A DNA stretch of 64,000 nucleotides from Rebecca billardiae RCC1528 (GCA_965240325.2 OZ251224.1:1550001-1614000), one strand, 5' to 3'. Positions 18,163 through 61,127 are shown, counted from the stretch's first letter. Program-made: numbers and translations. The notes: generated by a model from the letters alone, not told the origin.

Positions 18163-18618
18163 CGATGGCATCGCCATCGATCACGCGGCGGCGGTCAGCG
18201 GTCCTGCGCTTGCTGCACGCAGCTGAATTCCGAATCTGTACTGCCCGCGCCGTTACGGTGTCCCGCGGCCCGCCGCGGCGGCCGCGGCCCGCCCGCGCGA
18301 CGCTCATCAGGGTCTCAGAGATCTATCTTACGACTCATACTCTCTACATTAACCGTCAACGGTATTGACATACCAACGAGTTAGTACTAGTACCGTAGTA
18401 GCTTATGTGGGTATACGCACGCGTAATTAATATTGACTGACGATCCAACGTCATTACAGGCCTAAAGTATCAGAGTCTATAAAGTCGTAACCAATTGTGT
18501 CACGTAATCAAATATATGTTTTTAAAGACATTATAACGTCAGGCGTCAGCGACAGCGTGGTTCGTGCCCGCGCTGCAGGCTCCTCGCTGCGCGCTCTGCC
18601 CTGCACCGCTGGCCATAA
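18163..18618 (-). mobile_element. Possible related short HINE-like element
   Basis: 18556-18618 is homologous to the HINE 5' end (..ccctgcaccgctggccataa). A candidate 3' hairpin CGATGGC-atc-GCCATCG (18163-18179) and a degenerate subTIR (18193-18203) are present; the left boundary is uncertain. Confidence 0.4.
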
Positions 18619-19646: not shown

Positions 19647-20108
19647 CTATGTTCCCTTCTTCTTCTGGGTGCTAATGTACAAGACTGCCCCCGCATCGCG
19701 CCCGTCCACGGCGGCGCAGCGCGCGAAAAGGTCAGCAGTGCAGTGATGGCGACGTGCCACATGCGGAGAGGGCGCGCACCATTGTTCCCACGAATGAACG
19801 CGTCCCCGTACTTTGCCTTGAGCTGGCCGTTCACATACTCCTCGGTCTGCTCCATGGCAATGTTCATGTAGCCATCGAGGCATGCGAGGACGCCTGTGCA
19901 GCGATGCCAATCGCACATGAGTGTTCGGACGATGATCCAGCGCGCCAAGGCGCCGCGCCCGCGTGCGCGCAGGTGAGGGATGCCGCGCGCGCAGCCCATG
20001 ACGCGCACCTCGGTAGTCGACACCCGAGTTGAGCTTCACGACGACAGGTCGTCCAATCACGGACTTGAGGAAGTCCGAGGGGTTGGACTTGCCCTCGGTA
20101 GACGCCAT
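19647..20108 (-). CDS. LSM6: Sm-like protein LSm6 (exons 20108-20009, 19893-19780, 19684-19647)
   Basis: Spliced product PSDFLKSVIGRPVVVKLNSGVDYRG/VLACLDGYMNIAMEQTEEYVNGQLKAKYGDAFIRGNN/VLYIST, with two GT-AG introns. Confidence 0.95.
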   Translation of the reverse strand: MASTEGKSNPSDFLKSVIGRPVVVKLNSGVDYRGARHGLRARHPSPARTRARRLGALDHRPNTHVRLASLHRRPRMPRWLHEHCHGADRGVCERPAQGKVRGRVHSWEQWCAPSPHVARRHHCTADLFARCAAVDGRDAGAVLYISTQKKKGT

Positions 20109-20186
20109 GGCCGCTGGCTCGCGCAGGCACCGTGGACCCGACGGAACTCCGCTGCCGCTGGAGTCCCGCCCGAAGACGCGGCATCA

Positions 20187-21524
20187 ATGGCGTGGGGCAA
20201 GTCCGGCAGCAACGAGCGGCCAGCATGGCTGGGGTCGCTGCAACGCGACGACGCCACGCTCGTGGAGCTCGCGGTGCTTCGACCTCTCGACCGCTCGATG
20301 TGGCTCGAGCTGTGCGCGGCGCTGGGCAAGTCGACGCAGCTCAAGCGGCTCAGCGCGCACAAGAGTTTGGATGAGGAGGTGCTGGGCAAGATGGCCGACG
20401 CCGTGGCGAGCTCGCGCCTCGAGAAGGTGAGCGTGGGCACGAGCGCGCTCGGGGACGCGGGTGTGGCGCTCCTCCTCCCTGGCCTGGCCGCCTGTGCCAC
20501 CCTGACCGCGTGTGACCTCGAGCGCCGAGGCCTGACGGCTGCAGGCGCGCGCGCTGTGGCCGAGCAGCTCGTCGCACGATCGCCATCGCTGCGCTCGCTG
20601 GCTGTCGGGCGCAATGAGTTTGGCTCCGAGGGCGTGCAGGTGCTCGCCCATGCAGTGGCCGCGTCGCGCCTCACGGAGCTGGACATCTCGCACACCAGCG
20701 GCATCGAGCCGGCCAGTGCGGCCGCGCTCGCGCGCGCGTGCCATCCGCCGAGCGCGCTGTCTGCGCTGGTCATGCGCGGTGCGCCACTCGGCGCGGAGGG
20801 GGCGACGGCTTTTGCGAGCGCGCTCTTGTCGGCGTCGGCGAGCTGCACGCTAGCCTCCGTCGTCCTCGCCGACGCGAGCCTCGGCTCGGACGACTCAGCC
20901 GCGGCGCTCCTCACCGCGCTCGCCGGCGCGTGTGCGCACCTCGCGACGGTCGACGTGGAGAGCGCGAACATCGGCCCGGGGGCGTGTGATGCGGTGGGCG
21001 CGCTGGCGGCGCGGCAGCCGCTGCGCGTGCTCAGGCTTGGGCGGAACGCGCTCGGTGACGACGGCATCGGCCGCCTGGCACGCGCGCTCGACGGCCGCGC
21101 GGCCGCGCTGGAGGAGCTCCACCTCGGCTGTGTCGGCCTGGAGGGCGCGGATGCACTCGGCGCTCTGCTGCGTGCGCTGCGCCCGTGCGCCGCGCTGCGG
21201 ACGCTCGAGCTGATGGGGAACCCGCTCGGCGACGCGGGGGTGCGAGCACTCGTTGAGGAGGCCGCCGCCGCGCACGCCGGTGGCCTCGGCGCCGTCGACG
21301 CACTCGGGCTCGCGGGCTGCGCCATCGGCATTGAGGGCGCGCGCACAATTGCTGGCGCGCTGTGCGCGCGCGGCGTGCTGCCGCGCCTGGCCGCGCTGGA
21401 GTGCGCGAAGAATCCGGCGTGCGAGCATGCAGATTGGGAGGCTAGCGTCGTGCGCCCCCTCAGCGAGGCGCGGCCAACGACGATTGTCGTCTGGCGCGCG
21501 CATGGCTCTGAGGCTGCGCCCTAG
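20187..21524 (+). CDS. Leucine-rich repeat protein (RI-like)
   Basis: Repeated LxxLxLxxNxLGDxG motifs, e.g. LRVLRLGRNALGDDG and LRTLELMGNPLGDAG. Confidence 0.85.
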   Translation: MAWGKSGSNERPAWLGSLQRDDATLVELAVLRPLDRSMWLELCAALGKSTQLKRLSAHKSLDEEVLGKMADAVASSRLEKVSVGTSALGDAGVALLLPGLAACATLTACDLERRGLTAAGARAVAEQLVARSPSLRSLAVGRNEFGSEGVQVLAHAVAASRLTELDISHTSGIEPASAAALARACHPPSALSALVMRGAPLGAEGATAFASALLSASASCTLASVVLADASLGSDDSAAALLTALAGACAHLATVDVESANIGPGACDAVGALAARQPLRVLRLGRNALGDDGIGRLARALDGRAAALEELHLGCVGLEGADALGALLRALRPCAALRTLELMGNPLGDAGVRALVEEAAAAHAGGLGAVDALGLAGCAIGIEGARTIAGALCARGVLPRLAALECAKNPACEHADWEASVVRPLSEARPTTIVVWRAHGSEAAP

Positions 21525-22859
21525 GCTGTAGGCAAGGCAAGTCTCACTTGGACGACGCTGACGACGCGGTGGAACTATTTTCGATCATCGTTTTGACATT
21601 CAAGTCAAGGTGCAATCAGAACCCTTTCGGGTATGTAGTTTGGTGCAATCTTCCTATGAGGGTACGACCAAGGGCGGTACGACCAAGCCTTTGGGCTTTG
21701 GTACGACTCCGGTTCCTTTGACTTTTTTAAATTCCCCTTTATAACAGCCAGGTTTGGCGTTTGCCACTGGCGACTGCACACGGCAACAGGGGCGTTTGCG
21801 CCCTGTTGTCGTGTGCACACTGGGGCGCAAAAGGGGTCACCCTCAGGGGGTTTCGCACTGCTGTTGCCGTGTGCACCGGCCCGCTGTGGCCGTGCACACG
21901 GCAACAGGGCGCAAACGGCCCTGTTGCCGTGTGCAGGCGTGCATGGCTTGCGATGGCAGCCAGCCGTCAGCAGGGCGCCACGCCCACTGTTCGTTGGTAG
22001 GCTGGCCCGATGGCGTCGCGGAGCTCACGCGTACGGGGGAGGAGGGCATCGACGAGGAGACGACCAAGGGCGAGAAGCAGCAGGGGGCACGCAGCACGGG
22101 GCTCGGAGCATGCCGCGAGCACGCGTGCCTCCACACCGTCGCACATCAACCTTGCTCGTAGCTGTGCGCTGTGCTGCCACTCATCTCACCATCGCCCATG
22201 CTACGGGCGGGGCCCGGTGGTGGGCATCTACCTGTCGGCGCAGCACTGGCACCGGTGGTCGCCAGACACTCCTCGACTTGCTCTGCGCGTCACAGCAAGG
22301 AGACGGCAGCGGCACAGCTGCGTGAGCACATGAGGTCCTACTACTCTAGTAGTACTCGGCGAGGCAGTACAGGCATGGACTGCACTCCAGGTGCATGCGA
22401 GCTACTGGCATACTCCCCTACTCAGACCGCAGGACCATCAATGCGGCGCTGCTTCGGATACACGAGCGCAGCGCTGCTGGTAACAGCGGCGCTGTTGATG
22501 CTGCAGCAGCAGTACGTACAGTATAATGACGGGCGGCAGCAGTTGCTCCAACTAACAGCTCGGTGGTGCTCGCTTGAACGGCCTGGGCAATGGCGCGCCA
22601 AACGCAGCGACCTGGCCCATCGCGCCCGCATCGATGGGGTCGCTGGCACCTGATGATGCTGCACCCGCGCCCATCCGGGCCGCCAACACCAGCGGCAGCC
22701 ACGCTCGAGTCTGCACTGCATGCGGCAGCAGCTGCTGGAATGGTCCCGCGGCGGATGACGGCTTTCGCCGCAGATGACAGCTCGGTGTCGCTCGCTCGAG
22801 GGGCCTCGTCGATGGACGCGCCGAGCGCCGTGACGTTGCTCCACACGACCACGGCACTG

Positions 22860-25150
22860 CCCAGCGCGCTGGAGCCGCTGCCATCTGGTGCTGCTGTGCC
22901 CGCGCCCAGCTGGGGCCCAGCTGCAGCTGCACTTGACTCCGCGCCGCATTCGCTGCAGCAGCAGGGATGGTGCCACGGCGGGCGGCGTGGGTCGGCGCAG
23001 CTGTCAGCTCGGCGGTGCGCGCCCGAGGGGCCCGGGCATTGGATGCACCGAGCGCGGTGTCACTGCTCGCCTCCCGCAGCGCGCTGGAGCCGCTGCCATC
23101 CGACGCTGCTGCGCCCGCGCCAAGCTTGGGCAGCAGCGGCTGCGCTAGACTCCGCGCCGCGTGCGGCAGCAGCAGCAGGGATGGTGCCACGGTGGGCGGC
23201 GGCGGTCGCTGGAGCTGAAAACTCGGCTGTGTGCGCCCGAGGGGCCTGGGCGGTGGGCGCACCGAACGCGGTGCCGCTGCTCGCCTCGCCCATGGCGCTC
23301 GAGCCGCTGCCATCCGACGCTGCTGCGCACGCGCCAAGCTTGGGCAGCAGCGGCTGCGCTCGACTCCGCGCCGCGTGCGGCAGCAGCAGCAGGGATGGTG
23401 CCACGGTGGGCGGCGGCGGTCGCTGGAGCTGAAAGCTCGGCTGTGTGCGCGCGAGGGGCCTGGGCGGTGGGCGCACCGAACGCGGTGCCGCTGCTCGCCT
23501 CGCCCATGGCGCTCGAGCCGCTGCCATCCGACGCTGCTGCGCCCGCGCCAAGCTTGGGCAGCAGCGGCTGCGCTCGACTCCGCGCCGAGTGCGGCGGCAG
23601 CAGCAGGGATGGTGCCACGGCGGGCGGCGTGGGTCGCTGGAGCTGAAAGCTCGGCGGTGTGCGCCCGAGGGGCGTGGGCGCTGGACGCACCGAGCGCGGT
23701 GCCGCTGCTCGCCTCGCCCATGGCGCTCGAGCCGCTGCCATCCGGTGCTGGTGCGCCCACGCCCAGCTGGGGCAGCAGCAGCAGCGGCGCTCGACTCCGC
23801 GCCGCGTGCGGCAGCAGCAGCAGGAATGGTGCCACTGTGGGCGGCGGCGGTTGCTGCAGCCGGCAGCTCGGTGGCGCACGCCCGAGGGGCCTGGGCTGCA
23901 GACGCGCTGAGCGCGCCATCGCCGCTCGCCTCCCGCAGCGCGCTGGAGCCCTGCCATCCGACGCTGCTGCGCTTGCGCCCAGCTTGGGCAGCAGCAGCTG
24001 CGCTCGACTCCGCGCCGCGTGCGGCGGCAGCAGCAGGGATGGTGCCATGGCGGGCGGCGGCGGTCGACGGAGCTGAAAGCTCGGCGGTGTGCGCCCGAGG
24101 GGCCTAGGCGTTGGACGCACCGAACGCGGTGTCCCCGCTGGCCTCCCGCAGCGCGCTCGAGCCGCTGCCATCCGATGCTGCTGCACCAGCGCCCAGCTTG
24201 GGCAGCAGTAGCCGCGCCTGACTCCGCGCCGCGTGCGGCGGCAGCAGCAGGGATGGTGCCACGGCGGGTGGCGGCGGTCGACGCAGCTGAAAGCTCGGCG
24301 GCGCACGCCCGAGGGACCTGTGCTGCGGACGCGCTGAGCGCGCCATCGCCGCTCGCCTCCCGCAGCGCGCTGGAGCCGCTGCCATCCGATGCTGCTGCAC
24401 CAGCGCCCAGCTTGGGCAGCAGCAGCCGCGCCTGACTCCGCGCCGCGTGCGGCGGCAGCAGCAGGGATGGTGCCACGGCGGGCGGCGGCGGTCGACGCAG
24501 CTGGAAGCTCGGCAGCGCACGCCCGAGGGGCCTGGGCGCTGGGCGCACCGAACGCGGTGCCGCTGCTCGCCTCGCCCATGGCGCTCGAGCCGCTGCCATC
24601 CGACGCTGCTGCGCCCGCGCCCAGCTTGGGCAGCAGCGGCTGCGCTCGACTCCGCACCGCGTGCGGCAGCAGCAGCAGGGATGGTGGCACGGCGGGCGGC
24701 GGTGGTTGCTGCAGCCGGCAGCTCGGCGGTGCACGCCCGTGGGGCCTGGGCGCTGGACGCACCGAGCGCGGTGCCGCTGCTCGCCTCGCCCATAGCGCTG
24801 GAGCCGCTGCCATCCGGTGCTGCTGCGCCCGCGCCCGGCCAGGGCAGCAGCAGCAGCGCTCCATTCCGCGCCGCGTGCGGCAGCAGCAGCAGGGATGGTG
24901 CCACGGCGGGCGGCCGCAGCAGCTGAAAGCTTGGCAGTGCCCACCCGAGAGGCGTGGGCGCTGGACGCACCGAGCGCGGTGTAGCCGCTCGCCTCGTTCC
25001 GTAGCGCGCTCGAGCCTCTGCCATCCGATGCCGCTGCGCCCGCGCCCCGGCGCCGCTGCACGGCTGCAGCTGGCAGGCCTGGCAGCAGCTGCGCTCCGGA
25101 GGCTTCGCGCCGCATGCGGTGGTAGCAGCAGGGAGGTGCCACGGCCAAGC
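22860..25150 (+). repeat. ~214-bp GC/CAG-rich tandem array, left arm of element 1
   Basis: Recurring gagccgctgccatccgacgctgctgcgcccgcgcc..cagcagcagggatggtgccacgg units. Confidence 0.9.
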
Positions 25151-25989
25151 CGGCGGCGGTGGTCGGGCGGTGCTGAGTGCTGCTTGGCACGCGCGCCGAC
25201 CGGTCGTCGTTAAAACTACGTAGCGTATACGTACTCTACTACAGTACTACGGTCCCGGCGTAAGTATAGACTGCTGACCAGCTGACCGTGACCGTGTCGC
25301 GCCGGAGTGTAGCACGGTGATGACGCCAGCAGTCGAGCTGCTACTGCTGCTGCTCACTACTGATGCTCTTACATTGATGAGTTAGCTTCTACTAACTTAC
25401 ACTGTGAGCCGCCAGGCCCAGCACGACTTGTCGTCGCGACAGTCCGGACGCGGACGACGAGACCATCACATCACTGATAAGTGACTAGCTATAACGCGAG
25501 CAGTCAGGCTGTGACGGCGGACAGACGACAACACCGCCGCCAGGGTACCGATCCGGATAGACCGCTAGGTGGAGTAAGAGTCACTTATATATACGCACAT
25601 GACGGCAGAGTGTCGGACAGCCGCCGCCCCGGAGCTGGCTGATGCATCGTCGTAGTCGGAGTACCGCTCTGAACGGCTAGTCGGAGCAGATTGACGATGA
25701 TTCGAGATATATATGCTCGGTGCCGTAGTACGCGTGGATAATTTAAATATAAGAGTTCTTACGTACTCGTCTAGGCAGATGCTGATGTAGATTGTAGTGA
25801 TGACGATGCATGCATGATGCTGCTGATAACTTCTGCATCGCCTACCTGCCGGGCTACGACTGGTCTGCGCCGCCGGCCTTATGAATATGAGCTGACCGGC
25901 ATTGCCCGCCCCGGAACCTGCTGGCGGCTCGGCTCGCAGAAGGACAGAAGAAGTGTCGTAGCAACAGCTCCGGGGGCTGGCCAGCGCGC

Positions 25990-27780
25990 CTGACGCGTGC
26001 ATCAGCGTCACTGCATTGCGCGCGTCTGCCGCCCAGGCCCCTCGCGCGTGCAGCACCGAGCTGCTAGCTGCATGCACCGCCGCCCGCCCGCCGTGGCGCC
26101 ATCCCTGATGCTGCAGCCGCACTCGGCGCGACAGGGCGCGGGCGCGGCAGCATCGGATGGCAGCGGCTCGAGCGCGCCGGGCGAGGCGAGAGGCGTCAGC
26201 GCGCTCAATGCACCCACCGACCAGGCCCCTCAGGCGCACACCGCCGAGCTTTCAGCTCTAGCGTCGTCGCCCACCGTAGCACCATCCCTGGTGCTGCCGC
26301 CCCACGCGGCGCGGAGTCGAGCGCAGCCGCTGCTGCGCAAGCTTGGCGCGGGTGCAGCAGCGTCGGATGGCAGCGGCTCCAGCGCCATGGGCGAGGCGAG
26401 CAGCGGCACCGCGTTCGGTGCGTCCAGCGCCCAGGCCCCTCGGGCGTGCACCGCCGAGCCGACAGCTCCGTCGACCCACGCCGCCCGCCGTGGCACCATC
26501 CCTGCTGCTGCCGCCGCACTCTGCGCGGAGTCGAGCGCAGCCGCTGCTGCCCAAGCTTGGCGCAGGCGCAGCAGCGTCGGATGGCAGCGGCTCCAGCGCC
26601 ATGGGCGAGGCGAGCAGCGGCACCGCGTTCGGTGCGCCCACCGCCCAGGCCCCTCAGGCGCGCACCGCCGAGCTTTCAGCTCTAGCGACCGTCGTCGCCC
26701 ACCGTAGCACCATCCCTGCTGCTGCCGCCCCACGCGGCGGGGAGTCGAGCGCAGCCGCTGCTGCGCAAGCTTGGCGCGGGCGCAGCAGCGTCGGATGGCA
26801 GCGGCTCCAGCGCCATGGGCGAGGCGAGCAGCGGCACCGCGTTCGGTGCGCCCAGCGCCCAGGCCCCTCGGGCGTGCACCGCCGAGCTGACAGCTCCGTC
26901 GACCGCCGCCGCCCGCCGTGGCACCATCCCTGGTGCTGCCGCCGCACTCTGCGCGGAGTCGAGCGCAGCCGCTGCTGCCCAAGCTTGGCGCGGGCGCAGC
27001 AGCGTCGGATGGCAGCGGCTCCAGCGCCATGGGCGAGGCGAGCAGCGGCACCGCGTTCGGTGCGCCCACCACCCAGGCCCCTCGGGCGCGCACCGCCGAG
27101 CTTTCAGCTCTAGCGACCGTCGTCGGCCACCGTAGCACCATCCCTGGTGCTGCCGCCCCACGCGGCGGGGAGTCGAGCGCAGCCGCTGCTGCGCAAGCTT
27201 GGCGCGGGCGCAGCAGCGTCGGATGGCAGCGGCTCCAGCGCCATGGGCGAGGCGAGCAGCGGCACCGCGTTCGGTGCGCCCAGCGCCCAGGCCCCTCGGG
27301 CGTGCACCGCCGAGCTGACAGCTCCGTCGACCGCCGCCGCCCGCCGTGGCACCATCCCTGGTGCTGCCGCCGCACTCTGCGCGGAGTCGAGCGCAGCCGC
27401 TGCTGCCCAAGCTTGGCGCGGGCGCAGCAGCGTCGGATGGCAGCGGCTCCAGCGCCATGGGCGAGGCGAGCAGCGGCACCGCGTTCGGTGCGCCCACCGC
27501 CCAGGCCCCTCGGGCGTGCACCGCCGAGCCGACAGCTCCGTCGACCGCCGCCGGCCGCCGTGGCACCATCCCTGCTGCTGCCACGGCACGCGGCGCGGAG
27601 TTGAGCGCAGCTGCTGCTGCCCAAGCTGGGCGCGGGCACAGTAGTGCTCGAGGCAGCGGCTCCAGCGCGCTTGGCAGTGCCGTGGGCGCATCGAGCAGCG
27701 TCACCACGCTCGGCGCGTCCGTCGTCCAGGCCCTTCGAACCAGTGACACCAAGCTGTCAGCCGCGGCGACCGCCGTCATC
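25990..27780 (-). repeat. ~214-bp tandem array, inverted, right arm of element 1
   Basis: aagcttggcg recurs about every 214 bp between about 26339 and 27409; alternating variants give a 428-bp higher-order unit. Confidence 0.9.
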
Positions 27781-28600
27781 CGTGCAGGACCGTCCCAACG
27801 GCCCAGCTGCTGCTGCCGCGTGCAGCATAGAGTAGAGCGCCCCTCAGCCTGCCGGCAGAGTGGGGCGCAGGTGTTTGAAGCAGCACCCGGCGGTTGGTCC
27901 TGCGCTCCTGGGCACGGCTATGTACCTGTTGGTCTCATGAATGCGGGGGAATGCCAGCGCTCGCCACGCGTGCTCAGCCTCTCAGCCTCGCAAAGCAGAG
28001 GAGCACTTCATCTGCGAGCTCACACAGCTGTGCCGCTGCCGTCTCCTTGCTGTGACGCGCAGAGCAAGTCGAGGAGTGTCTGGCGACCACCGGTGCCAGT
28101 GCTGCGCCGACAGGTAGATGCCCACCACCCGGCCGCGCCCGTAGCATGGGCGATGGTGAGATGAGTGGCAGCACAGCGCACAGCTACGAGCAAGGTTGAT
28201 GTGCGACGGTGTGGAGGCACGCGTGCTCGCGGCATGCTCCGAGCCCCGTGCTGCGTGCCCCCTGCTGCTTCTCGCCCTTGGTCGTCTCCTCGTCGATGCC
28301 CTCCTCCCCCGTACGCGTGAGCTCCGCGACGCCATCGGGCCAGCCTACCAACGAACAGTGGGCGTGGCGCCCTGCTGACGGCTGGCTGCCATCGCAAGCC
28401 ATGCACGCCTGCACACGGCAACAGGGCCGTTTGCGCCCTGTTGCCGTGTGCACGGCCACAGCGGGCCGGTGCACACGGCAACAGCAGTGCGAAACCCCCT
28501 GAGGGTGACCCCTTTTGCGCCCCAGTGTGCACACGACAACAGGGCGCAAACGCCCCTGTTGCCGTGTGCAGTCGCCAGTGGCAAACGCCAGACCTTACTG

Positions 28601-28762
28601 TTTATAACGGGCTCCGGGTGATCAGACTGGCGGCCGAAGCCTCCAGCCCTACCCTGGCCAGCCCCCAACCAACCACCACCCTCACCCAACCTCGAACCAC
28701 TGACCGATACACCAAGTGCCTTGACACCACTCCGCTGTGGACAGCCCGCCTCCAGAGGGGGC
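28601..28762 (-). mobile_element. SINE-like repeat split by element 1 (remainder at 21723-21744)
   Basis: Reverse-complement match to 60942-61127; A-box-like CAGCGGAGTGG, B-box-like GGTTCGAG and an A-rich tail. Confidence 0.55.
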
Positions 28763-29001
28763 TCCGGCATGGTTTCGTGGATGGCTACGATATGGTTACG
28801 ATGTCCGGCGACATAGCCCCGCTATCATTGGCGCCGGACCACACCGTAGCAAAGAGCCAGCAGGCTGAAGGCGGCAAGAAACACAGACGACAAAGGCGAG
28901 AGGCTCGCCCCCCGCCTCCGCGACCTTTTTACCTGCCGCGCGGCGCACGGCGCGGCGACTGTGGTGTGCGGTGGAGCCCAGCCGCAGCCTAGCGCAGAGG
29001 T

Positions 29002-30102
29002 ATGGGGAGCGCGTGCACAAAAGGCAGCCCCGACGGCTCGCCTGACGGCGCTGACGTTGACGACGAGGCGCAGGACACGGTGGGTGAGGTGCACTCGCCC
29101 ACGAAGCACAAGACATTCCGCGACCGGCGATTGACGGTGAGCCAGGTGCGCGATCCAAAGTCAAAGGACCGGCACAAGCGACTCTCCGTCTATGGTGGCG
29201 GCTCGGTGGACGACCCGGCGCCGCAGGTCGAAGATGTCGGCCTCACAACCATTGCTGCGAAATCGATCCCCGGAGTCGAGCCGGTGCCCGGCGGCTCTGT
29301 CGCAAAGATCAACCAGGATCGTGCGATCGCGATCTATCCCTTCCTGAACGACCGCAAATGTGTTCTTCTCGGCGTGTACGACGGCCACGGCCGGCAGGGC
29401 GAGCAGATCTCGCAGTTCGTCAAGCAGAACCTGCCGAACACGATTTTGCGGCACGCGGCCGTGCAGACGAGGCCAGCCGTGGCGCTCAAGGAGGCGTATG
29501 TTGTCTGCGACGAGGAGCTCGCAGCTAGCACTATCGAGGCGAGCGTAAGCGGCACCACCGCTGTCACCGTGCTCGTTAAGGACGCTACCTACTGGGTCGC
29601 CAACTCTGGCGACTCGCGCGCTGTGATTGGCAGATGGAAGTCTGGCAAGAAGGCCATGACTGCGCACGACGTCTCCTTCGACCAGAAGCCCGACACGCCG
29701 TCGGAGATGAAGCGCATCATCGCGGCGGGCGGGCACGTGACGCCTGCCGGCGCGAACGGCACGCCGGCGCGCGTGTGGCACAACTTCCGCGGCCTGGCCA
29801 TGGCGCGCTCGATCGGCGACCACAACGCGTCCACGGTCGGAGTCGTCGCCGAGCCCGAGGTGCACCAGTACACTTTCGACAAGGACGACGCCGTGATGGT
29901 GATCGGCTCGGACGGCGTGTGGGAGCTGCTCGACTCACAACAGGTGATCGACATCGCCGTGCAGCACTACTCGCTGCCGGCGGCCGATATCGTCGACCGC
30001 ATCATCGAGCAATCGGCGTACATGTGGAAGGTGGAGGAGGGCGACTACCGCGACGACATCTCGTGCATCGTGCTCAAGCTGCCATGGCACGAGCAGGCGT
30101 GA
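29002..30102 (+). CDS. Protein phosphatase 2C with putative N-myristoylation signal
   Basis: NQDR, GVYDGHG, ANSGDSRA, ARSIGD, GSDGVW and DDIS motifs; N-terminus MGSAC. Confidence 0.93.
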   Translation: MGSACTKGSPDGSPDGADVDDEAQDTVGEVHSPTKHKTFRDRRLTVSQVRDPKSKDRHKRLSVYGGGSVDDPAPQVEDVGLTTIAAKSIPGVEPVPGGSVAKINQDRAIAIYPFLNDRKCVLLGVYDGHGRQGEQISQFVKQNLPNTILRHAAVQTRPAVALKEAYVVCDEELAASTIEASVSGTTAVTVLVKDATYWVANSGDSRAVIGRWKSGKKAMTAHDVSFDQKPDTPSEMKRIIAAGGHVTPAGANGTPARVWHNFRGLAMARSIGDHNASTVGVVAEPEVHQYTFDKDDAVMVIGSDGVWELLDSQQVIDIAVQHYSLPAADIVDRIIEQSAYMWKVEEGDYRDDISCIVLKLPWHEQA

Positions 30103-30729
30103 TCCCCGCGCCCACGCTGCTCTGCGCGCAGGCCGAGCGGTGGCTCGCGGTGGTGGCCCGCCGCCCGCGCGACGCCCGGCGAGCTGTCCGCGCTCGCGCC
30201 GCACGCACCACGCCGCGCAGGGTGGCCTTCGTGACGTGGTGGGCGGCGTGCACACAGCCCTACGGCAGCAGCCAGCCCAGCCGGTCTGCCCGCCGCGGCT
30301 GGCGTCTCTCGCTCGCTTCGCCTGTTTCGAGTGCGTGCGTTGGCTGTCTCCGCCAGCTGGCGCTGGGGCCCGCGGTGTTAGCTCGTCCGCCCAGCTTCGG
30401 CCGTGCTCGTGACAGATCGGCGAAGGATGCCGAGTTGCTAAGTCGGACAGCGCGCCTCGCGGCTCACAGTCATCAGGCCGTTCCGACTCGGCGACTCCGC
30501 GACCGCCCGCCGACAGGGCCGGCAGGGCAGATTCAGACAGTCTCACTCTTCGACTTCACTCTTTCAGTCAGCCACTTCGAGTGACGTCGAGTCTTCCGCG
30601 GCTGGCGTCCGCAGCAATCAATGGCGACGATGACGTATAAAAATTAAAAATAATTCTGCATAATTATTAACGACGCATATTATTAGTCTGCTGCTTTAAT
30701 AGTCACTCCAGAAGAGTCACTACAAAAAG

Positions 30730-32475
30730 TCTCCGCTGGCGGAGCATCCGGGCAAGGGGCCCAGACCCTCCGCAGGCGGAGATTTTTGTGGCCACGAAAA
30801 ATCCCCGCTGGCGGAGCATGGGCGCTCCACGAATGCTCCGCTGGTGGAGCCTCGGCTAGGCCAATGTCATTATTGATGACTGACTTGACTTGAGCTGAGC
30901 TCCGCTGGCGGAGCTTTGGTGGCGGAGCATGTCATATTGGAGTGATGCGTAGCCGTCAACCGTCATCAGAATCCATATGACAGTATCCACACTCAACCTC
31001 CGCTGGCGGAGCTCGCAGACCTATTTGACTTGAACTGAGCTCCGCTGGCGGAGCCTCGGCTGCGCCGAATGTCATTATTAATGACCCACTAGACTAGTGA
31101 ACTGAGCTCCATTGGCGGAGCCTCGGCTGCGCCGAATGTTATTGTTGACGACCCACTTGACTTGAACTGAGCTCCGCTGGCGGAGCTTTGGTGGCGCCGT
31201 ATCAGTGTCATATTGGAGTAATGCGAAGCCGTTAACCGTAATCATCATCATCATCCATATTGGCACGTAACCTCCGCTGGCGGAGCTCGCAGACCTATTG
31301 AACTTGAACTAAGCTCCGCTGGCGGAGCCTCGGCTGCGCCGAATTTCATTATTAATGACCCACTTGACTAGTGGACTGAGCTCCACTGGCGGAGCCTCGG
31401 CTGCGCCGAATGGTATTGTTGACGACCCACTTGACTTGAACTGAGCTCCGCTGGCGGAGCTTTGGTGGCGCCGTATGTCATATTGGAGTAATGCGAAGCC
31501 GTTAATCGTCGTAATCATCATCCATATTGACACGTAACCTCCGCTGGCGAAGCCCACTGGCCTATTCGACTTGAACTGAGCTCCGCTGGCGGAGCCTCGG
31601 CTGCGCCGAATGTCATTATTAATGACCCACTAGACTAGTGAACTGAGCTCCATTGGCGGAGCCTCGGCTGCGCCGAATGTTATTGTTGACGACCCACTTG
31701 ACTTGAACTGAGCTCCGCTGGCGGAGCTTTGGTGGCGCCGTATCAGTGTCATATTGGAGTAATGCGAAGCCGTTAACCGTAATCATCATCATCATCCATA
31801 TTGGCACGTAACCTCCGCTGGCGGAGCTCGCAGACCTATTGAACTTGAACTAAGCTCCGCTGGCGGAGCCTCGGCTGCGCCGAATGTCATTATTGATGAC
31901 CCACTTGACTTGAACTGAGCTCCGCTGGCGGAGCTTTGGTGGCGCCGTACGTCATATTGGAGTAATGCGAAGCCGTTGACCGTAATCATATCATCCATAT
32001 TGACACGTAACCTCCGCTGGCGGAGCTCGCAGATCGACCTATTGGACTTGAACTGAGCTCCACTGGCGGAGCCTCGACTGCGCCGAATGTCATTATTAAT
32101 GACCCACTTGACTTGAATTGACCTCCGCTGGCAGAGCTTTGGTGGCGCCGTATGTCATATTGGAGTAATGCGAATCGTAAATAACCGTAATCATATCCAT
32201 ATTGACACTCAACCTCCGCTGGCCGAGCTCGCTGATCTATTCGACTCGAACTGAGCTCCGCTGGCGGAGCCTCGGCTGCGCCGAATGTCATTATTAATGA
32301 CCCACTTGACTTGAATTGAGCTCCGCTGGCGGAGCTTTGGTGGCGCCGTATGTCATATTGGAGTAATGCGAATCGTAAATAACCGTAATCATATCCATAT
32401 TGACACTCAACCTCCGCTGGCCGAGCTCGCTGATCTATTCGACTCGAACCGAGCTCCGCTGGCGGAGCCTCGGCT
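30730..32475 (+). repeat. CACTA left subterminal array of the quasi-palindrome CTCCGCTGGCGGAG with recurring spacers
   Basis: Dozens of motif copies; a 541-bp offset duplication is shown by identical ORFs at 31078 and 31619. Confidence 0.92.
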
Positions 32476-33099
32476 TGCGGTTTGCTGCAATTGGGGCTGG
32501 GCTCAGCATGGGGCAGCTGTTCTGCACAGCCCAGGCGGGGCGTCACCGCCTGTGGGCCGCCGGTGGGCAGGGCCGACGGCGTCGCAGAGCTCGTGCGTGG
32601 GAGCAGCGCGTTGAGGAAGCGATCAAGGTCGAGAAGGAAGGGGCAAGCAGCAGGGGCTGCCGGTACGGCACGTTTGTACATGCCTCCACACCGGTGCACA
32701 TCACCCTTGCTCACTGCAGTGAACAGTGCTGTCACTCATCTCATCCTCGCTCACCATGCAGTGACGGCCGAGCTGCGGCAAACACTCACCGGCACCGAAC
32801 ACGCATCGGCGGTGCCCGCTGGCGCTGGCATCATGCTGTCCTCTACTTGCTGTCGGACAGCATTAGGAGACGGCACCGCCGCATTTCTGCGAGCGGGCGA
32901 GGTGCTGTCCTCTACTCAGCGAGGCTGAGAGGCTGAGCACGGATCACGGATGGTGAGCCCTGGTATCTCAACGCATCCAGGAGAGCAGTTGGTGCATGAC
33001 TGTGCTCAGACGTGCAGGACCAACCATCCGGTGCTGCTTCAAGCACCCGCGCCAACAGCGGCGGCACTCAACTCCACGCTGTTGATGCGGCCGCACGGC

Positions 33100-34555
33100 T
33101 GCAGGGATGGTACCACGGCGGGCGACGGCGGGCGCAGCAGCTCGCAGCTCAAAGTTGCGCGCCAGTGGGGCCTGGGCGCCGGGCGCACCGAGCGCGGTGA
33201 CGCTGCTCACCTCGCCCAGCGCGCTGGAGCCGCTGTCATCCGACGCTGCTGTGCCCGCGTCCAGCTTGGGCTGCAGCAGCTGCGCTCGACTCCGCGCCGA
33301 GTGCGGCGGCAGCAGCGGGGATGGTGCCACGGCGGGCGGCGGCAGTCGCCGCAGCTGGCAGCTCGGCGGCTCTCGCCTGAGGGGCCTGGACGGTGGACGC
33401 ACCGAGCGCGGTGACGCTGCTCGCCTCGCCCAGCGCGCTGGAGCCGCTGCTACCGGGCGCTGCTGTGCCCGCGTCCAGCTTGGGCTGCAGCAGCTGCGCT
33501 CGACTCCTCGCCGAGTGCGGCGGCAGCAGCAGGGATGGTACCACGGCGGGCGGCGGCTATCACTTTGGCTGGCAGCTCGGCGGCTCTCGCCTGAGGGGCC
33601 TGGACGGTGGACGCACCGAGCGCGGTGACGCTGCTCGCCTCGCCCAGCGCGCTGGAGCCGCTGCCATCCGGTGCTGCGGTGTCCGCGCCCAGCCGGAGCA
33701 GAAAGAGGTGCGCTCGACTCCGCACCCGTGCGGCGGCAGCAGCAGGGATGGTATCAAGGCGGGCGGCGGCAGTCGCTGCAGCTGGCAGCTCGGTGGTGCC
33801 TGCCCGAGGGACCTGGGCGACGGACGCGCCGAGCGAGCTGACGCCCCTCGCCTCCCCTATCACGCTCGAGCCGCTGCCATTTGATGCTGCTGCAGCGTTC
33901 GGGCAGCTGCAGACTCTGCGCTCGACTCCACGCCGCGTGCGGCCGCAGGCAGCAGCAGCAGCGGGCCCGAGGGGCCTGGACCACGGACGCGCCGAGCGCG
34001 GTGACGCCTCTCGCCTCGCTCAGCGCGCTGGAGCCGCTGCCACCGGGCGCTGCTGCGCCCGCGTCCAGCTTGGGCTGCAGCAGGCCGCTCAATCAACTCC
34101 TCGCCGAGTACGGCGGCAGCAGCAGGGACGTTGCCACGGCGGGCGGCGGCTATCACTTCAGCTGGCAGCTCGGTGGTGCCTGCCGGGGCCTGGACGGTGG
34201 ATGCACCGAGCGTGGTGGCGTCGCTCGCCGCGCCCAGCGCGCTGGAGCCGCTGCCATCCGGCGCTGCGGTGTCCGCACCCAGCCGGAGCATCAGGAGGCG
34301 CGCTCGACTCCGCACCCGTGCGGCGGCAGCAGCAGGGATGGTATCACGGCGGGCGGCGGCAGTCGCTGCAGCTGGTAGCTCGGTGGTGCCTGCCCGAGGG
34401 ACCTTGGCGACGGACGCGCCGAGCGAGCTGACGCCCCTCGCCTCCCCTATCGCGCTCGAGCCGCTGCCGTTTGATGCTGCTGCAGCGTTCGGGCAGCTGC
34501 AGACTCTGCGCTCGACTCCACGCCGCGTGCGGCCGCAGGCAGCAGCAGCAGCAGG
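33100..34555 (+). repeat. 214-bp-family satellite in CACTA left arm
   Basis: Same unit family as 22860-25150. Confidence 0.85.
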
Positions 34556-35409
34556 CTGGTGATTAACAGCTGCTGTCAGATCTCCGTGACTGCTCGGTTG
34601 CTGCGTATGAACCAGGTGGGTGAGCCGCTGAGTCGCAGGGGCCGCATGAATTAACTGGCGACCGCACGCCGGTATAGGCTTAAGACGTACGGCGTACGTC
34701 CGAGTCCCAATCATCATCAGCGCAGGAGTTTTGAGAACGCGGTGACGGGTCACACGCAGCTACTGTTATTATGAGGGCGCTATTCCTTTATCGATAGTAG
34801 TAGTAAGCTACTACGCTGCCGGCCCCGCCCTCAGCACTATATTGACGGCATATGGAGGCGCAGGTCCGCCTGACCGCTATATTGCATCTTCATGATGATG
34901 AGTTGATGACGATGACGATAACGACTCCTCCGATTCCGGAGTCATAAGTGTGACACCGCCACTGGACACGGGCTACTTACGTACTCAGCTCGGATCATTT
35001 GCGCCTGCTACTGGTAGTCGGGCTCCGCGCGGCGGATCATCATCATCAGTCATATCAGCAGTGCTATCTGATGCATAGCCATATCCGCTGCACAGTGATG
35101 TCGTAGTACTGATGGTGCGTGCGCTGAGATCTGGGCCGCGGCACTTCGGCGGCGCGCCTTGCTCGGCCTCACCTACGCCGGGCCATACTTGTTCGCGCGC
35201 CCGGCGCCGGGCTAGCTCAAAGAGCTGACCGCAGCGGCTCCCGCGCCCCGGAAGGCCTGCGGCCCTCACAGGTCATTGGCAGGCAGCAGTGTCCGGGACT
35301 GAAGCCTGCCGGGTTCTCCCCGATTCGAATTCACCGATGTGACCGAGGTACCGCCTGCTGCCGTCAGCCGGCGGAAGAAGTGTCACAACGGCTGCTGCTG
35401 GCCAGCATA

Positions 35410-36905
35410 TCGGACGCGTGCATCAGCGTCACCGCATTGGGCGCGTCTGCCGCCCAGGCCCCTCGCGCGCACACAACCGAGCTGATCGCTGCATCCACCA
35501 CCGCGGCCCGCCGTGGCGCCTTCCCTGCTACTGCAGCCGCACTCGGCGCGGAGTCGAGCGCAGCTGCTGCTGCCTAAGCCGGTCACGCCCCTCGGGCGCG
35601 CACCACCGAGATGCCAGCTGCATCGACCGCCACCGCCCGCCGAAGCATCATCCCTCCCACTGGCGCGGAGTCGAGCGCAGCTGCCAGCTGTGACAGCTAG
35701 CTGCCCCGGCGGGGCGCGGAGCCGCGGACAACGCAGCGCCGGATGGCAGCGGCTCCAGCGCGCTGGGCGAGGCGAGCGACGTCGCCGCGCTCGGTGCATC
35801 CACCACCCAAGCCCCTCGGGCAGGCACCACCGAGCTGCCAGCTGAAGTGATAGCCGCCGCCCGCCGTGGCAACGTCCCTGCTGCTGCCGCCGTACTCGGC
35901 GAGGAGTTGATTGAGCGGCCTGCTGCAGCCCAAGCTGGACGCGGGCGCAGCAGCGCCCGGTGGCAGCGGCTCCAGCGCGCTGAGCGAGGCGAGAGGCGTC
36001 ACCGCGCTCGGCGCGTCCGTGGCCCAGGCCCCTCGGGCCCGCTGCTGCTGCTGCCTGCGGCCGCACGCGGCGTGGAGTCGAGCGCAGAGTCTGCAGCTGC
36101 CCGAACGCTGCAGCAGCATCAAATGGCAGCGGCTCGAGCGTGATAGGGGAGGCGAGGGGCGTCAGCTCGCTCGGCGCGTCCGTCACCCAGGTCCCTCGGG
36201 CAGGCACCACCGAGCTGCCAGCTGCAGCGACTGCCGCCGCCCGCCTTGATACCATCCCTGCTGCTGCCGCCGCACGGGTGCGGAGTCGAGCGCACCTCTT
36301 TCTGCTCCGGCTGGGCGCGGACACCGCAGCGCCGGATGGCAGCGGCTCCAGCGCGCTGGGCGAGGCGAGCAGCGTCACCGCGCTCGGTGCATCCACCGTC
36401 CAGGCCCCTCAGGCGAGAGCCGCCGAGCTGCCAGCTGAAGTGATAGCCGCCGCCCGCCGTGGTACCATCCCTGCTGCTGCCGCCGCACTCGGCGAGGAGT
36501 CGAGCGCAGCTGCTGCAGCCCAAGCTGGACGCGGGCACAGAAGCGTCGGATGACAGCGGCTCCAGCGCGCTGGGCGAGGCGAGCAGCGTCACCGCGCTCG
36601 GTGCATCCACCGTCCAGGCCCCTCAGGCGAGAGCCGCCGAGCTGCCAGCTGAAGTGATAGCCGCCGCCCGCCGTGGTACCATCCCCGCTGCTGCCGCCGC
36701 ACTCGGCGAGGAGTCGAGCGCAGCTGCTGCAGCCCAAGCTGGACGCGGGCACAGCAGCGTCGGATGACAGCGGCTCCAGCGTGCTGGGCGAGGTGAGCAG
36801 CGTCACCGCGCTCGGTGCGCCCGGCGCCCAGGCCCCACTGGCGCGCAACTTTGAGCTGCGAGCTGCTGCGCCCGCCGTCGCCCGCCGTGGTGCCATCCCT
36901 GCAGC
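35410..36905 (-). repeat. 214-bp-family satellite in CACTA right arm (inverted)
   Basis: Reverse complement of the left-arm array. Confidence 0.85.
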
Positions 36906-37529
36906 CGTGCGGCCGCATCAGCAGCGTGGAGTTGAGTGCCGCCGCTGTTGGCGCGGGTGCTTGAAGCAGCACCGGATGGTTGGTCCTGCACGTCTGAGCA
37001 CAGTCATGCACCAACTGCTCTCCTGGATGCGTTGAGATACCAGGGCTCACCATCCGTGATCCGTGCTCAGCCTCTCAGCCTCGCTGAGTAGAGGACAGCA
37101 CCTCGCCCGCTCGCAGAAATGCGGCGGTGCCGTCTCCTAATGCTGTCCGACAGCAAGTAGAGGACAGCATGATGCCAGCGCCAGCGGGCACCGCCGATGC
37201 GTGTTCGGTGCCGGTGAGTGTTTGCCGCAGCTCGGCCGTCACTGCATGGTGAGCGAGGATGAGATGAGTGACAGCACTGTTCACTGCAGTGAGCAAGGGT
37301 GATGTGCACCGGTGTGGAGGCATGTACAAACGTACCGTACCGGCAGCCCCTGCTGCTTGCCCCTTCCTTCTCGACCTTGATCGCTTCCTCAACGCGCTGC
37401 TCCCACGCATGAGCTCTGCGACGCCGTCGGCCCTGCCCACCGGCGGCCCACAGGCGGTGACGCCCCGCCTGGGCTGTGCAGAACAGCTGCCCCATGCTGA
37501 GCCCAGCCCCAATTGCAGCAAACCGCAAG

Positions 37530-39673
37530 CCGAGGCTCCGCCAGCGGAGCTCGGTTCGAGTCGAATAGATCAGCGAGCTCGGCCAGCGGAGGTTGAGTGT
37601 CAATATGGATATGATTACGGTTATTTACGATTCGCATTACTCCAATATGACATACGGCGCCACCAAAGCTCCGCCAGCGGAGCTCAATTCAAGTCAAGTG
37701 GGTCATTAATAATGACATTCGGCGCAGCCGAGGCTCCGCCAGCGGAGCTCAGTTCGAGTCGAATAGATCAGCGAGCTCGGCCAGCGGAGGTTGAGTGTCA
37801 ATATGGATATGATTACGGTTATTTACGATTCGCATTACTCCAATATGACATACGGCGCCACCAAAGCTCCGCGCCAGCGGAGCTCAGTTCAAGTCAAGTG
37901 GGTCGTCAACAATAACATTCGGCGCAGCCGAGGCTCCGCCAGTGGAGCTCAGTTCACTAGTCAAGTGGGTCATTAATAATATGACATTCGGCGCAGTCGA
38001 GGCTCCGCCAGCGGAGCTCAGTTCAAGTCAAATAGGTCTGCGAGCTCCGCCAGCGGAGGTTGAGCGTGGATACTGTCATATGGATTCTGATGACGGTTGA
38101 AGGCTACGCATCACTCCGATATGACAATCATACGGTGCCACCAAAGCTCCGCCAGCGGAGCTCAGTTCAAGTCAGGTGGGTCGTCAACAATAACATTCGG
38201 CGCAGCCGAGGCTCCGCCAGTGGAGCTCTGTTCACTAGTCAAGTGGGTCATTATTAATAATGACATTCGGCGCAGCCGAGGCTCCGCCAGCGGAGCTCAG
38301 TTCGAGTCGAATAGGCCAGTGGGCTCCGCCAGCGGAGGTTACGTGTGAATATGGATGATGATTACGGTTAACGGCTTCGCATTACTCCAATATGACATAC
38401 GGCGCCACCAAAGCTCCGCCAGCGGAGCTCAGTTCAAGTCAAGTGGGTCGTCAACAATAACATTCGGCGCAGCCGAGGCTCCGCCAGTGGAGCTCTGTTC
38501 ACTAGTCAAGTGGGTCATTATTAATAATGACATTCGGCGCAGCCGAGGCTCCGCCAGCGGAGCTCAGTTCGAGTCGAATAGGCCAGTGGGCTCCGCCAGC
38601 GGAGGTTACGTGTGAATATGGATGATGATTACGGTTAACGGCTTCGCATTACTCCAATATGACATACGGCGCCACCAAAGCTCCGCGCCAGCGGAGCTCA
38701 GTTCAAGTCAAGTGGGTCGTCAACAATAACATTCGGCGCAGCCGAGGCTCCGCCAGTGGAGCTCTGTTCACTAGTCAAGTGGGTCATTAATAATCACATT
38801 CGGCGCAGCCGAGGCTCCGCCAGCGGAGCTCTGTTCAAGTCGAATAGGCCAATGGGCTCCGCCAGCGGAGGTTAGGTGTGAATATGGATGATGATTACGG
38901 TTAACGGCTTCGCATTACTCCAATATATGACATACGGCGCCACCAATTAGCTCCGCCAGCGGAGCTCAGTTCAAGTCAAGTGGGTCGTCAACAATAACAT
39001 TCGGCGCAGCCGAGGCTCCGCCAGTGGAGCTCAGTCCACTAGCTAAGTGGGTCATTAATAATAATGAAATTCGGCGCAGCCGAGGCTCCGCCAGCGGAGC
39101 TTAGTTCAAGTTCAATAGGTCTGCGAGCTCCGCCAGCGGAAGTTACGTAGTGCCAATATGGATGATGATTACGGTTAACGGCTTCGCATTACTCCAATAT
39201 GACATACGGCGCCACCAAAGCTCCGCCAGCGGAGCTCAGTTCAAGTCAAGTGGGTCGTCAACAATAACATTCGGCGCAGCCGAGGCTCCGCCAGTGGAGC
39301 TCTGTTCACTAGTCAAGTGGGTCATTAATAATGACATTCGGCTCAGTCGAGGCTCCGCCAGCGGAGCTCAGTTCAAGTCAAATAGGTCTGCGAGCTCCGC
39401 CAGCGGAGGTTGAGTGTGGATACTGTCATATGGATTCTGATGACGGTTGACGGCTACGCATCACTCCAATATGACATGCTCCGCCACCAAAGCTCCGCCA
39501 GCGGAGCTCAGCTCAAGTCAAGTCAGTCATCAATAATGACATTGGCCTAGCCGAGGCTCTACCAGCGGAGCATTCGTGGAACGCCCATGCTCCGCCAGCG
39601 GGGATTTTTCGTGGCCACAAAAATCTCCGCCTGCGGAGGGTCTGGGTCTCCCACGATGCTCCGCCAGCGGAGA
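37530..39673 (-). repeat. CACTA right subterminal array (CTCCGCCAGCGGAG)
   Basis: Reverse complement of the left array, with a different unit number and order. Confidence 0.92.
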
Positions 39674-39945
39674 CTTTTTGTAGTGACTGCCCTGCACTCA
39701 CACTGATGCGTACTTTGAATTTAATAGTGATGATATTAATGATATTATGGACGACTACTACAGGCTCCAGAGGGCCGCGCGGCCGCTCTGACAGCTGCTG
39801 CTGCTGGTTACGTTCGAGAGGGTGCGACGTGATGACATCATCACCGCGTGCAGCCGTGCTGCGGACCCATGGCCATGGCAAGGCGTGTGCGTGACTCAAT
39901 ATTTGAGTCAATACATCATGTCGAGCGTGCTGATGAATCTGATGA

Positions 39946-43341: not shown

Positions 43342-43443
43342 GATGCCGCGTAACTTCCGATTCCCGGCCCGACGGCGTCGGCAAGTGGTGCGCACCGCTG
43401 CTGCTGTCGATGAACTGCTACGGCTGTGACGCCAGACGACTGC

Positions 43444-45485: not shown

Positions 45486-45603
<118 letters not shown>

Positions 45604-60941: not shown

Positions 60942-61127
60942 GCCCCCTCTGGAGGCGGGCTGTCCACAGTGGAGTGGTGTCAAGGCACTTGGTGTCTCGG
61001 TCAGTGGTTTGAGGTTGGGTGAGGGTGGCGGTTGGTTGGGGGCTGGCCAGCCGGTAGGGCTGGAGGCCGTTCGGCCGCCCACGGTCTGATCACCCGGAGC
61101 CCGTTATAAAGCGGGGGATTTAAAAAA
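60942..61127 (+). mobile_element. Intact SINE-like repeat (~185 bp) ending TTTAAAAAA
   Basis: Paralog of the split copy at 28601-28762 plus 21723-21744; contains a single TTATAAA site. Confidence 0.55.

What the first reader, a model, noticed from the sequence alone, without database searches (positions are those of the whole stretch)
21745..39685. Two giant palindromic elements share one internal core but carry unrelated transposon ends (terminus swapping)
Seen: both elements read terminus - unique segment - 214-bp satellite - spacer - inverted satellite - inverted unique segment - terminus. The interiors are homologous. 22000-22090 resembles 32565-32656; gcgaggctgagaggctgagcac is shared (32919-32940, with reverse complements near 27971 and 37063); even the spacer/right-arm junction matches (gagctgacc..gccccggaa..gaagaagtgtc..gctggccagc..gacgcgtgcatcagcgtcac at about 25890-26030 and 35220-35450). 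The ends, however, are unrelated: CAG..CTG with CACACGGCAACAG repeats and a TTTATAA duplication, versus CACTA with CTCCGCTGGCGGAG repeats. Inference: a non-coding palindromic cargo has been fitted with the cis ends of two different transposase superfamilies, i.e. a modular selfish element that switches mobilisation systems. I know of no description of this arrangement.
Basis: partly seen in the sequence, partly recalled or inferred. Interest (0 to 1): 0.88.

Follow-up and report, generated by a model that had tools for sequence, protein, structure and literature searches.

The report
Foldback transposons sharing body, different ends
Two neighbouring non-coding, hairpin-shaped jumping-DNA copies in a haptophyte alga share an old inner body but have unrelated ends and leave 7- versus 5-letter insertion scars, so two different enzymes probably move them; the supposed 'CACTA' end is a misreading, and similar chimeras are known from Drosophila.

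Summary
Both palindromic elements are real insertions in a Pavlovales-type haptophyte. E1 is 21745-28600, with CAG..CTG ends and a 7-bp TSD (an empty paralogous site lies at about 61.1 kb). They share a body: a unique segment (67-75% identical), a 214-bp array (~81%), an orthologous last unit (88%) and a ~150-bp tail. Terminal modules and most of the spacers do not align.

Main correction: E2 is not CACTA-ended. It spans 30709-39694, with CAG..CTG ends and a perfect 5-bp TSD (CACTC); CACTA lies 9 bp inside. Chance is about 8e-4, and short-read contigs break or start aligning at the CAG. So both elements have CAG tips. TSDs of 7 and 5 bp suggest different transposases but not different superfamilies, since hAT5 and hAT7 exist.

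Best reading: one body passed between two non-autonomous foldback families long ago, and arm-to-arm conversion then made the arms symmetric. Precedent: Galileo copies with one centre and three subfamilies' TIRs. No transposase was found. The scan already noted this pattern ~820 kb away (s1-332110, s1-332086). New variant of a known kind.

The parts
21738..21744 (.). E1 left target-site duplication TTTATAA (7 bp)
   Evidence: single copy in the empty paralog at 61104-61110
21745..28600 (.). E1: 6,856-bp non-coding foldback element, CAG..CTG ends
   Evidence: short-read contig L003 is 100% identical to the window and ends at 21774 = terminus+29
21745..21935 (+). E1 left terminal module: 30-bp tip (asymmetric to the right tip at +4/+5) plus a ~160-bp hairpin of alternating TGCACACGGCAACAG motifs
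21961..22500 (+). E1 left unique segment U; outer part identical to the right arm up to ~22321, inner part only 61% to the right arm
22520..25130 (+). E1 left 214-bp array (~12 units)
25170..25830 (.). E1 spacer, no alignment to the E2 spacer, no Pfam or Rfam hit
25830..26130 (-). E1 last degenerate array unit J (25976-26130, 88% to E2's) plus shared tail
26131..27800 (-). E1 right 214-bp array (~8 units, alternating two-unit pattern)
27845..28384 (-). E1 right unique segment U; inner part 75% to E2's U
28410..28600 (-). E1 right terminal module
28601..28607 (.). E1 right target-site duplication TTTATAA
28601..28762 (+). Right part of the small host repeat into which E1 inserted (left part 21723-21744)
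   Evidence: 93% to 61110-60942; contig L001 starts at 28733 = repeat end-29
60942..61127 (-). Empty paralogous copy of the host repeat, with a single TTTATAA
29002..30102 (+). Single-copy PP2C phosphatase gene between the two elements (not part of either)
   Evidence: Pfam PF00481; 75% to Pavlovales sp. CCMP2436
30704..30708 (.). E2 left target-site duplication CACTC (5 bp)
30709..39694 (.). E2: 8,986-bp non-coding foldback element, CAG..CTG ends; CACTA starts 9 bp inside (30718 / 39685)
30709..32475 (+). E2 left terminal module: tip (asymmetric at +4 to +6) and a 1.75-kb array of the palindromic motif CTCCGCTGGCGGAG with 42/67/65/~100-bp spacing
32527..33050 (+). E2 left unique segment U, homologous to E1's U, 99-100% to E2's right arm
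33100..34545 (+). E2 left 214-bp array (~7 units, some truncated)
34560..35160 (.). E2 spacer
35160..35550 (-). E2 last degenerate unit J (35397-35550) plus tail, orthologous to E1's
35551..36900 (-). E2 right 214-bp array
36950..37476 (-). E2 right unique segment U
37528..39694 (-). E2 right terminal module (2.15-kb motif array plus tip)
39695..39699 (.). E2 right target-site duplication CACTC

Best explanation
E1 and E2 are copies of two non-autonomous foldback-type cut-and-paste DNA transposon families. Shown: each has CAG..CTG tips and a perfect TSD (7 bp for E1, 5 bp for E2), each end type is repeated elsewhere in the genome, and neither encodes a recognisable protein. Inferred: the terminal motif arrays are transposase-binding sites, and two different transposases supplied in trans move the two families. 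The inner body (unique segment + 214-bp array + last unit + tail) is of common descent (shown). Inferred: it passed once, long ago (25-33% divergence), from one family into the ends of the other, by gap repair or template switching at an excision break or by recombination between neighbouring copies. Afterwards each element's arms copied each other (over 577 bp in E1, ~3.5 kb in E2), which made the new ends and the body symmetric, and the arrays homogenised within each element. The superfamily of either end, and which family was the donor, are undetermined; both could belong to one superfamily.
For: TSDs and CAG tips. Empty site for E1. Ends are multi-copy, since short-read contigs stop 29 nt inside them. 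Body homology begins at 21961/32527, 26-52 bp inside the inner edge of each terminal array, with nothing alignable outward. J units are orthologous (score 226 vs at most 162 for any other unit). Array units are on average more alike within an element (84-89%) than between elements (81-82%). Arm-identity steps. E1's left inner U is outgroup to E1-right plus E2 (36:11:15 sites), so E2's left arm was overwritten by a right-type arm. Asymmetric left and right tips in both elements mean that each has a true left and right end, which fits body-into-ends capture rather than duplication of one end. Precedents: PMC3573991, PMC8277862 and PMC6379663.
Against: No transposase or autonomous partner was found. 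No other full copy could be read, so family-wide TSD lengths rest on one copy each. The spacers also became unalignable over the same time span, so lack of similarity alone does not prove exchange. Both ends share a design (CAG, asymmetric bases, then a motif hairpin from +22 to +30), which vertical descent would also give. No breakpoint microhomology can be seen at this divergence.
Confidence: 0.55

Rival explanations
1. Vertical descent with no swap: one ancestral foldback split into two lineages, and their terminal arrays were replaced in place by birth and death of motifs while tracking diverging transposases of one superfamily (as with hAT5 and hAT7).
For: Both have CAG..CTG tips with asymmetric bases at +4 to +6 followed by a motif hairpin. 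Spacers of similar length (about 710 and 655 bp) at the same position are also unalignable. TSD length varies within hAT.
Against: No trace of similarity in the tips (z=0.8), directly beside a segment that keeps 67-75% identity. The motifs are wholly different. From general knowledge, transposon termini are usually better conserved than non-coding interiors.
Confidence: 0.18
2. The body is itself a separate mobile or repeated unit (a third foldback, or a Helitron-like carrier of the 214-bp array) that inserted into, or was captured by, two unrelated small hairpin elements independently; arm copying then mirrored it.
For: The shared unit is polar: U - array - J - tail is complete only in the right arms. 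In a low-coverage run, E2's U and the array are covered more deeply than the ends (not a copy number). Arrays carried by Helentrons are known (PMC7492417, seen by title and abstract only).
Against: No TSD, TIR or Helitron-type end was seen at either body boundary. Two independent insertions would both have to land within about 50 bp of the array edge. Arm conversion could, however, have erased a TSD.
Confidence: 0.18
3. One reading: E2 is a true CACTA/EnSpm element bounded at 30718/39685, whose 3-bp TSD (AGT) mutated or was converted to ACT on one side; the body has moved between CACTA and a P/hAT-like superfamily.
For: CACTACAAAAAG resembles plant En/Spm TIRs (recalled, not tested). Arrays of short motifs in both orientations resemble CACTA subTIRs (PMC8978399).
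Against: No direct TSD at that boundary, and the symmetry runs through it. CAG tips plus a 5-bp TSD lie 9 bp further out, with chance 8e-4. Contig L001 stops at 30737, not about 30747. A contig from another copy aligns from 30709. Another 'CACTA' foldback in this genome was noted to lack a TSD (s1-343777, unchecked).
Confidence: 0.06
4. Assembly artefact: collapsed or fold-back chimeric reads made the palindromes.
For: Inverted repeats are prone to this, and no spanning long read was examined.
Against: The arms differ in unit number and sequence. TSDs are perfect. Short-read contigs confirm the E1-left and E2-left junctions. Contigs of another run match inside the arms, one at 100% over 27906-28054.
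Confidence: 0.03

Closest known systems
Galileo (P superfamily, Drosophila) two-TIR and chimeric copies (PMC3573991)
   Same: Long, internally repetitive TIRs; non-autonomous copies; 7-bp TSD (as E1); TIR growth by inverted copying of internal sequence; one central region found with TIRs of three subfamilies (D, E, X).
   Different: Galileo's swapped TIRs are still 77% alike and of one family. Here the terminal modules do not align and the TSD lengths differ (7 vs 5). Arms here are 2.7-4.5 kb, against about 1.3 kb at most. No transposase links these elements to P.
Tetris / FB-type foldback elements (PMC4079207)
   Same: Arm = flanking domain + ~220-bp tandem array + inner domain, around a non-coding middle; array-bearing.
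   Different: Tetris has 8-10-bp TSDs (suggested Mutator). No sharing of the body with unrelated ends appears in the passages read.
Pack-TIR / Pack-CACTA capture (PMC8277862, PMC6379663)
   Same: Foreign sequence comes to lie between transposon ends by gap filling, fork switching or use of neighbouring ends, and then moves as a unit.
   Different: The cargo here is another element's non-coding body, mirrored into both arms, not a gene fragment.
Fanzor1 and TET/JBP cargo shared across superfamilies (PMC3627910, PMC12730594)
   Same: Homologous cargo is found with the ends of several transposon groups.
   Different: That cargo is protein-coding. Here it is non-coding, and the superfamilies are not established.
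hAT5 / hAT7 and the CMCT clade (PMC12730594)
   Same: 5-bp and 7-bp TSDs occur in hAT; CA..TG termini with 2-5-bp TSDs occur in CMCT.
   Different: Membership needs a transposase, which is absent. Kilobase palindromic arms are not a defining feature of these groups.

Membership tests
CACTA/EnSpm (E2) | CACTA/CACTG motif at the very terminus | tested here: not met
   CACTA starts 9 bp inside the CAG tip; boundary fixed by the TSD and contig breaks
CACTA/EnSpm (E2) | 2-3-bp direct TSD | tested here: not met
   none at CACTA (AGT/ACT); 5-bp CACTC at CAG
CACTA/EnSpm (E2) | Subterminal short repeats in direct and inverted orientation | tested here: met
   26 and 29 copies of a palindromic 14-mer in the two arrays; not exclusive to CACTA
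CACTA/EnSpm (E2) | EnSpm-type transposase in the element or in a partner with the same ends | not testable with these tools
   no Pfam hit in element ORFs; the rest of the genome is not readable
P superfamily / Galileo (E1) | 7-8-bp TSD | tested here: met
   TTTATAA, with an empty site
P superfamily / Galileo (E1) | THAP-P-type transposase partner | not testable with these tools
   no coding sequence; no partner accessible
hAT (hAT7 for E1, hAT5 for E2) | TSD of 5-8 bp depending on subgroup | tested here: met
   7 and 5 bp; subgroups per PMC12730594
hAT (hAT7 for E1, hAT5 for E2) | YARNG terminal consensus (recalled from memory) | tested here: inconclusive
   only E2's right tip CAGGG fits; CAGAA, CAGCC and CAGTA do not
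hAT (hAT7 for E1, hAT5 for E2) | hAT transposase partner | not testable with these tools
   none found
CMCT clade (E2) | CA..TG termini and 2-5-bp TSD | tested here: met
   CAG..CTG and 5 bp; definition from PMC12730594; not diagnostic on its own
Foldback-type non-autonomous TIR element (structural class) | Very long inverted arms with internal tandem repeats around a non-coding middle | tested here: met
Foldback-type non-autonomous TIR element (structural class) | TSD and dispersed copies | tested here: met
   TSDs; ends are repeated elsewhere
Helitron/Helentron carrier (body only) | 3' hairpin plus CTRR end or asymmetric TIRs at the body boundaries | tested here: inconclusive
   by inspection, none conserved between E1 and E2; boundaries are 25-35% diverged

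The most novel reading that the evidence does not exclude
A non-coding, array-bearing palindromic body has repeatedly changed vehicles in this alga. It would be mobile today under three or more unrelated end types served by transposases of different superfamilies (7-bp and 5-bp TSDs shown here; 9-bp and 3-bp types only in unchecked scan notes, and possibly on another body), with foldback arm conversion acting as a routine way to fix newly acquired ends.
Probability: 0.2. Interest if true: 0.7.

Novelty: new variant of a known kind. Interest (0 to 1): 0.42.

Why it matters
It is a clear case of a non-coding foldback body outliving one set of transposon ends and moving under another. This bears on how non-autonomous elements persist after their transposase declines, and on how satellite arrays spread. 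If the two transposases prove to be of different superfamilies, cross-superfamily cargo exchange would extend from coding cargo (Fanzor, TET/JBP) to purely structural DNA. In practice, the corrected E2 boundary predicts that many 'CACTA foldbacks' noted in this genome are misclassified and have CAG tips with 5-bp TSDs. It also points to an unidentified 5-bp-TSD transposase in haptophytes.

Tried and rejected
1. CACTA boundary for E2: rejected.
2. A 9-bp direct repeat TTTAATAGT at 30695-30703 / 39720-39728 as a Mutator-type TSD: chance about 0.02, no inverted termini there, and contig L001 would have to stop at about 30733; rejected.
3. An 8-bp TSD for E1 (TTTATAAC): formally possible, but it gives asymmetric termini; 7 bp preferred.
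4. A 3-bp TSD ACT at 30708/39695: only the middle of the 5-bp TSD.
5. Spacer homology, and spacer versus unique segment: none.
6. TGCA as a TSD of a nested body: it is simply the end of E1's motif.
7. Coding capacity or RNA families inside the elements: no Pfam hit (one E=0.059 match below cut-off) and no Rfam hit.
8. Origin of the 214-bp unit from the ends or U: no alignment beyond the array's own edge.
9. Other copies in public collections: 0 exact matches for the E2 terminus in metagenome and viral contigs, and 0 for the shared 22-mer in metagenomes; no similarity in the 21-kb PP2C locus of CCMP2436.
10. A short-read contig over E2's right junction via the UDPGP gene: not on record.
11. Run X1 does not cover single-copy DNA (PP2C depth 0), so it gives no copy numbers.
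12. Paper searches for non-coding bodies with termini of different superfamilies returned nothing relevant; keyword search in an open-access library is weak evidence of absence.

Full report
Context. The window is 66% G+C, gene-rich and eukaryotic. The PP2C gene between the two elements is 75% identical to a Pavlovales sp. CCMP2436 protein, and about 50-57% to proteins of other named haptophytes, so the host is most likely a Pavlovales haptophyte. Two Logan short-read contigs from run ERR14847148 match the window at 99.95% (28733-30737) and 100% (16138-21774). That run is probably the same sample, so it checks the assembly but is not an independent strain.

Element 1. E1 runs 21745-28600, begins CAG, ends CTG and is flanked by TTTATAA. 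It interrupts a ~185-bp repeat whose uninterrupted paralog, with one TTTATAA, lies at 60942-61127 on the minus strand. This shows an insertion with a duplicated target. The terminal module is a 30-bp tip plus a ~160-bp hairpin of one motif in alternating orientation. The arms are identical at 571 of 577 positions from the tip, fall to 61% in the inner unique segment, and carry about 12 and 9 units of a 214-bp array.

Element 2, corrected. Scanning symmetric boundaries gives one good solution, 30709/39694: tips CAGAAGAGT and CAGGGCAGT, flanked by CACTC on both sides. Random flank pairs from the window give a 5-bp duplication plus a 3-base inverted tip within 20 bp with probability 8e-4.

The contigs support this boundary. 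In ERR14847148, contig ends fall 29 bases inside a repeat: L003 ends at 21774 (E1 tip + 29) and L001 starts at 28733 (host-repeat end - 29). L001 ends at 30737 = 30708 + 29, one base outside the CAG (a C shared by chance would explain that), and ten bases short of what a CACTA terminus predicts. An allelic difference at 30738 could also break the contig there. However, in a different run a contig of another copy aligns from exactly 30709 with 21 unmatched letters before it; it has 10 gap letters, so it is neither of E2's own ends. E2 is therefore a CAG..CTG element with a 5-bp TSD, not a classical CACTA. Its terminal modules are 1.75- and 2.15-kb arrays of a palindromic 14-mer. Its arms are 95-100% identical from the tip to about 34270.

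Shared body. Homology starts at 21961 in E1 and 32527 in E2, within 26-52 bp of the inner edge of each terminal array. The unique segment is 67-75% identical (scores far above shuffles). Array units are 81-82% identical between elements and 84-89% within them. The innermost degenerate unit of the right arm is 88% identical between E1 and E2 and scores 226 against at most 162 for any other unit, so it is orthologous. A tail beyond it also aligns (25830-25920 vs 35160-35260, z=6.2). The other ~600 bp of spacer do not align (z=0.7), nor do the termini (z=0.8). In the inner unique segment, 36 sites group E1-right with E2, 11 group E1-left with E2 and 15 group E1's two arms. So E1's arms split before E1 and E2 did (or E1-left evolved faster), and E2's left arm was later overwritten by a right-type arm.

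Mechanism. Shown: two TSD-flanked, non-coding foldback elements with repeated ends; a homologous body; non-homologous ends; different TSD lengths; recent arm homogenisation of different extent. Inferred: the motif arrays are transposase-binding sites (as proposed for Galileo); different TSD lengths mean different enzymes; the body entered one family's ends by gap repair, template switching or recombination (as for Pack-TIRs). Each element has distinct left and right tips, which fits a body captured between a donor's two ends better than one end copied to both sides. I put this reading at 0.55. In-place turnover of the ends in one lineage (0.18) cannot be excluded, because the spacers also lost similarity and the ends share a design. 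Independent capture of a separate mobile body gets 0.18, a true CACTA boundary 0.06 and artefact 0.03.

Comparison with known systems. Foldback architecture with a ~220-bp array is described for Tetris. One central region with TIRs of three subfamilies is described for Galileo, though there the TIRs remain 77% alike. Coding cargo shared across superfamilies is described for Fanzor1 and TET/JBP. TSDs of 5, 6 and 7 bp occur within hAT, and CA..TG termini with 2-5-bp TSDs occur in the CMCT clade, so neither end can be assigned without its transposase. I found no paper on a non-coding body with unalignable ends and different TSD lengths, but the searches were limited.

Earlier scan notes (unchecked leads). 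The same pattern was noted about 820 kb away (s1-332110, s1-332086). There are many 'CACTA' foldbacks in this genome, one explicitly without a TSD (s1-343777); that note prompted the boundary re-scan. A 7-bp-TSD family with conserved asymmetric tips was also noted (s1-355055). I could not read those sequences.

Verdict. The two-superfamily claim is unproven and its CACTA basis is wrong. This is a new variant of a known kind; interest 0.42. The novel reading (repeated cross-superfamily vehicle switching) has probability about 0.2 and interest 0.7 if true.

Noticed in passing
window 3612-4925 and 14372-15676: Two 95%-identical copies of a 1.3-kb repeat in the same orientation, with weak inverted ends (ATGACCGCG.. 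/ ..CGCGGGCCAT). A ~65-75-bp piece of its end recurs near 18556-18630. The second copy abuts an (AC)28(AT)47 microsatellite.
   Followed up: partly
window 1723-2883 and 43443-43491: A 1.16-kb stretch bounded by a perfect 39-bp inverted repeat and containing a 262-aa ORF (1846-2634). A third copy of the end (49 bp, 100%) lies at 43443-43491. Possibly another TIR family; TSD not resolved.
   Followed up: partly
window 46202-55762: 3,186-aa ORF with FG-rich repeats and ankyrin-like modules; internal ~1.2-kb tandem repeats about 99% identical (49592-54861), and a 667-bp duplication (46463-47129 / 48326-48992).
   Followed up: no
window 30695-30703 and 39720-39728: 9-bp direct repeat TTTAATAGT just outside E2's TSDs. 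In the empty site it would be a short local duplication; chance about 0.02.
   Followed up: yes
window 26131-27800: E1's right array alternates two unit types (units two apart are 96-99% identical, neighbours about 91%), i.e. an incipient 428-bp higher-order repeat.
   Followed up: partly
window 59202-61082 (-): 626-codon open frame without a Pfam hit that starts inside the empty copy of the host repeat; may be spurious.
   Followed up: no
window 61364-62659 (-): ORF with LNR/Notch and Kringle domains in a haptophyte.
   Followed up: no
L002 10001-15025: In Pavlovales sp. CCMP2436 the PP2C gene lies 3 kb upstream of the pseudouridine synthase gene; in this window the synthase match (12790-13623) lies about 15 kb upstream of PP2C. 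The linkage is kept but the order differs, and no foldback sequence is present in that locus.
   Followed up: partly
window 45490-45601: (AT)56 microsatellite in a G+C-rich genome.
   Followed up: no
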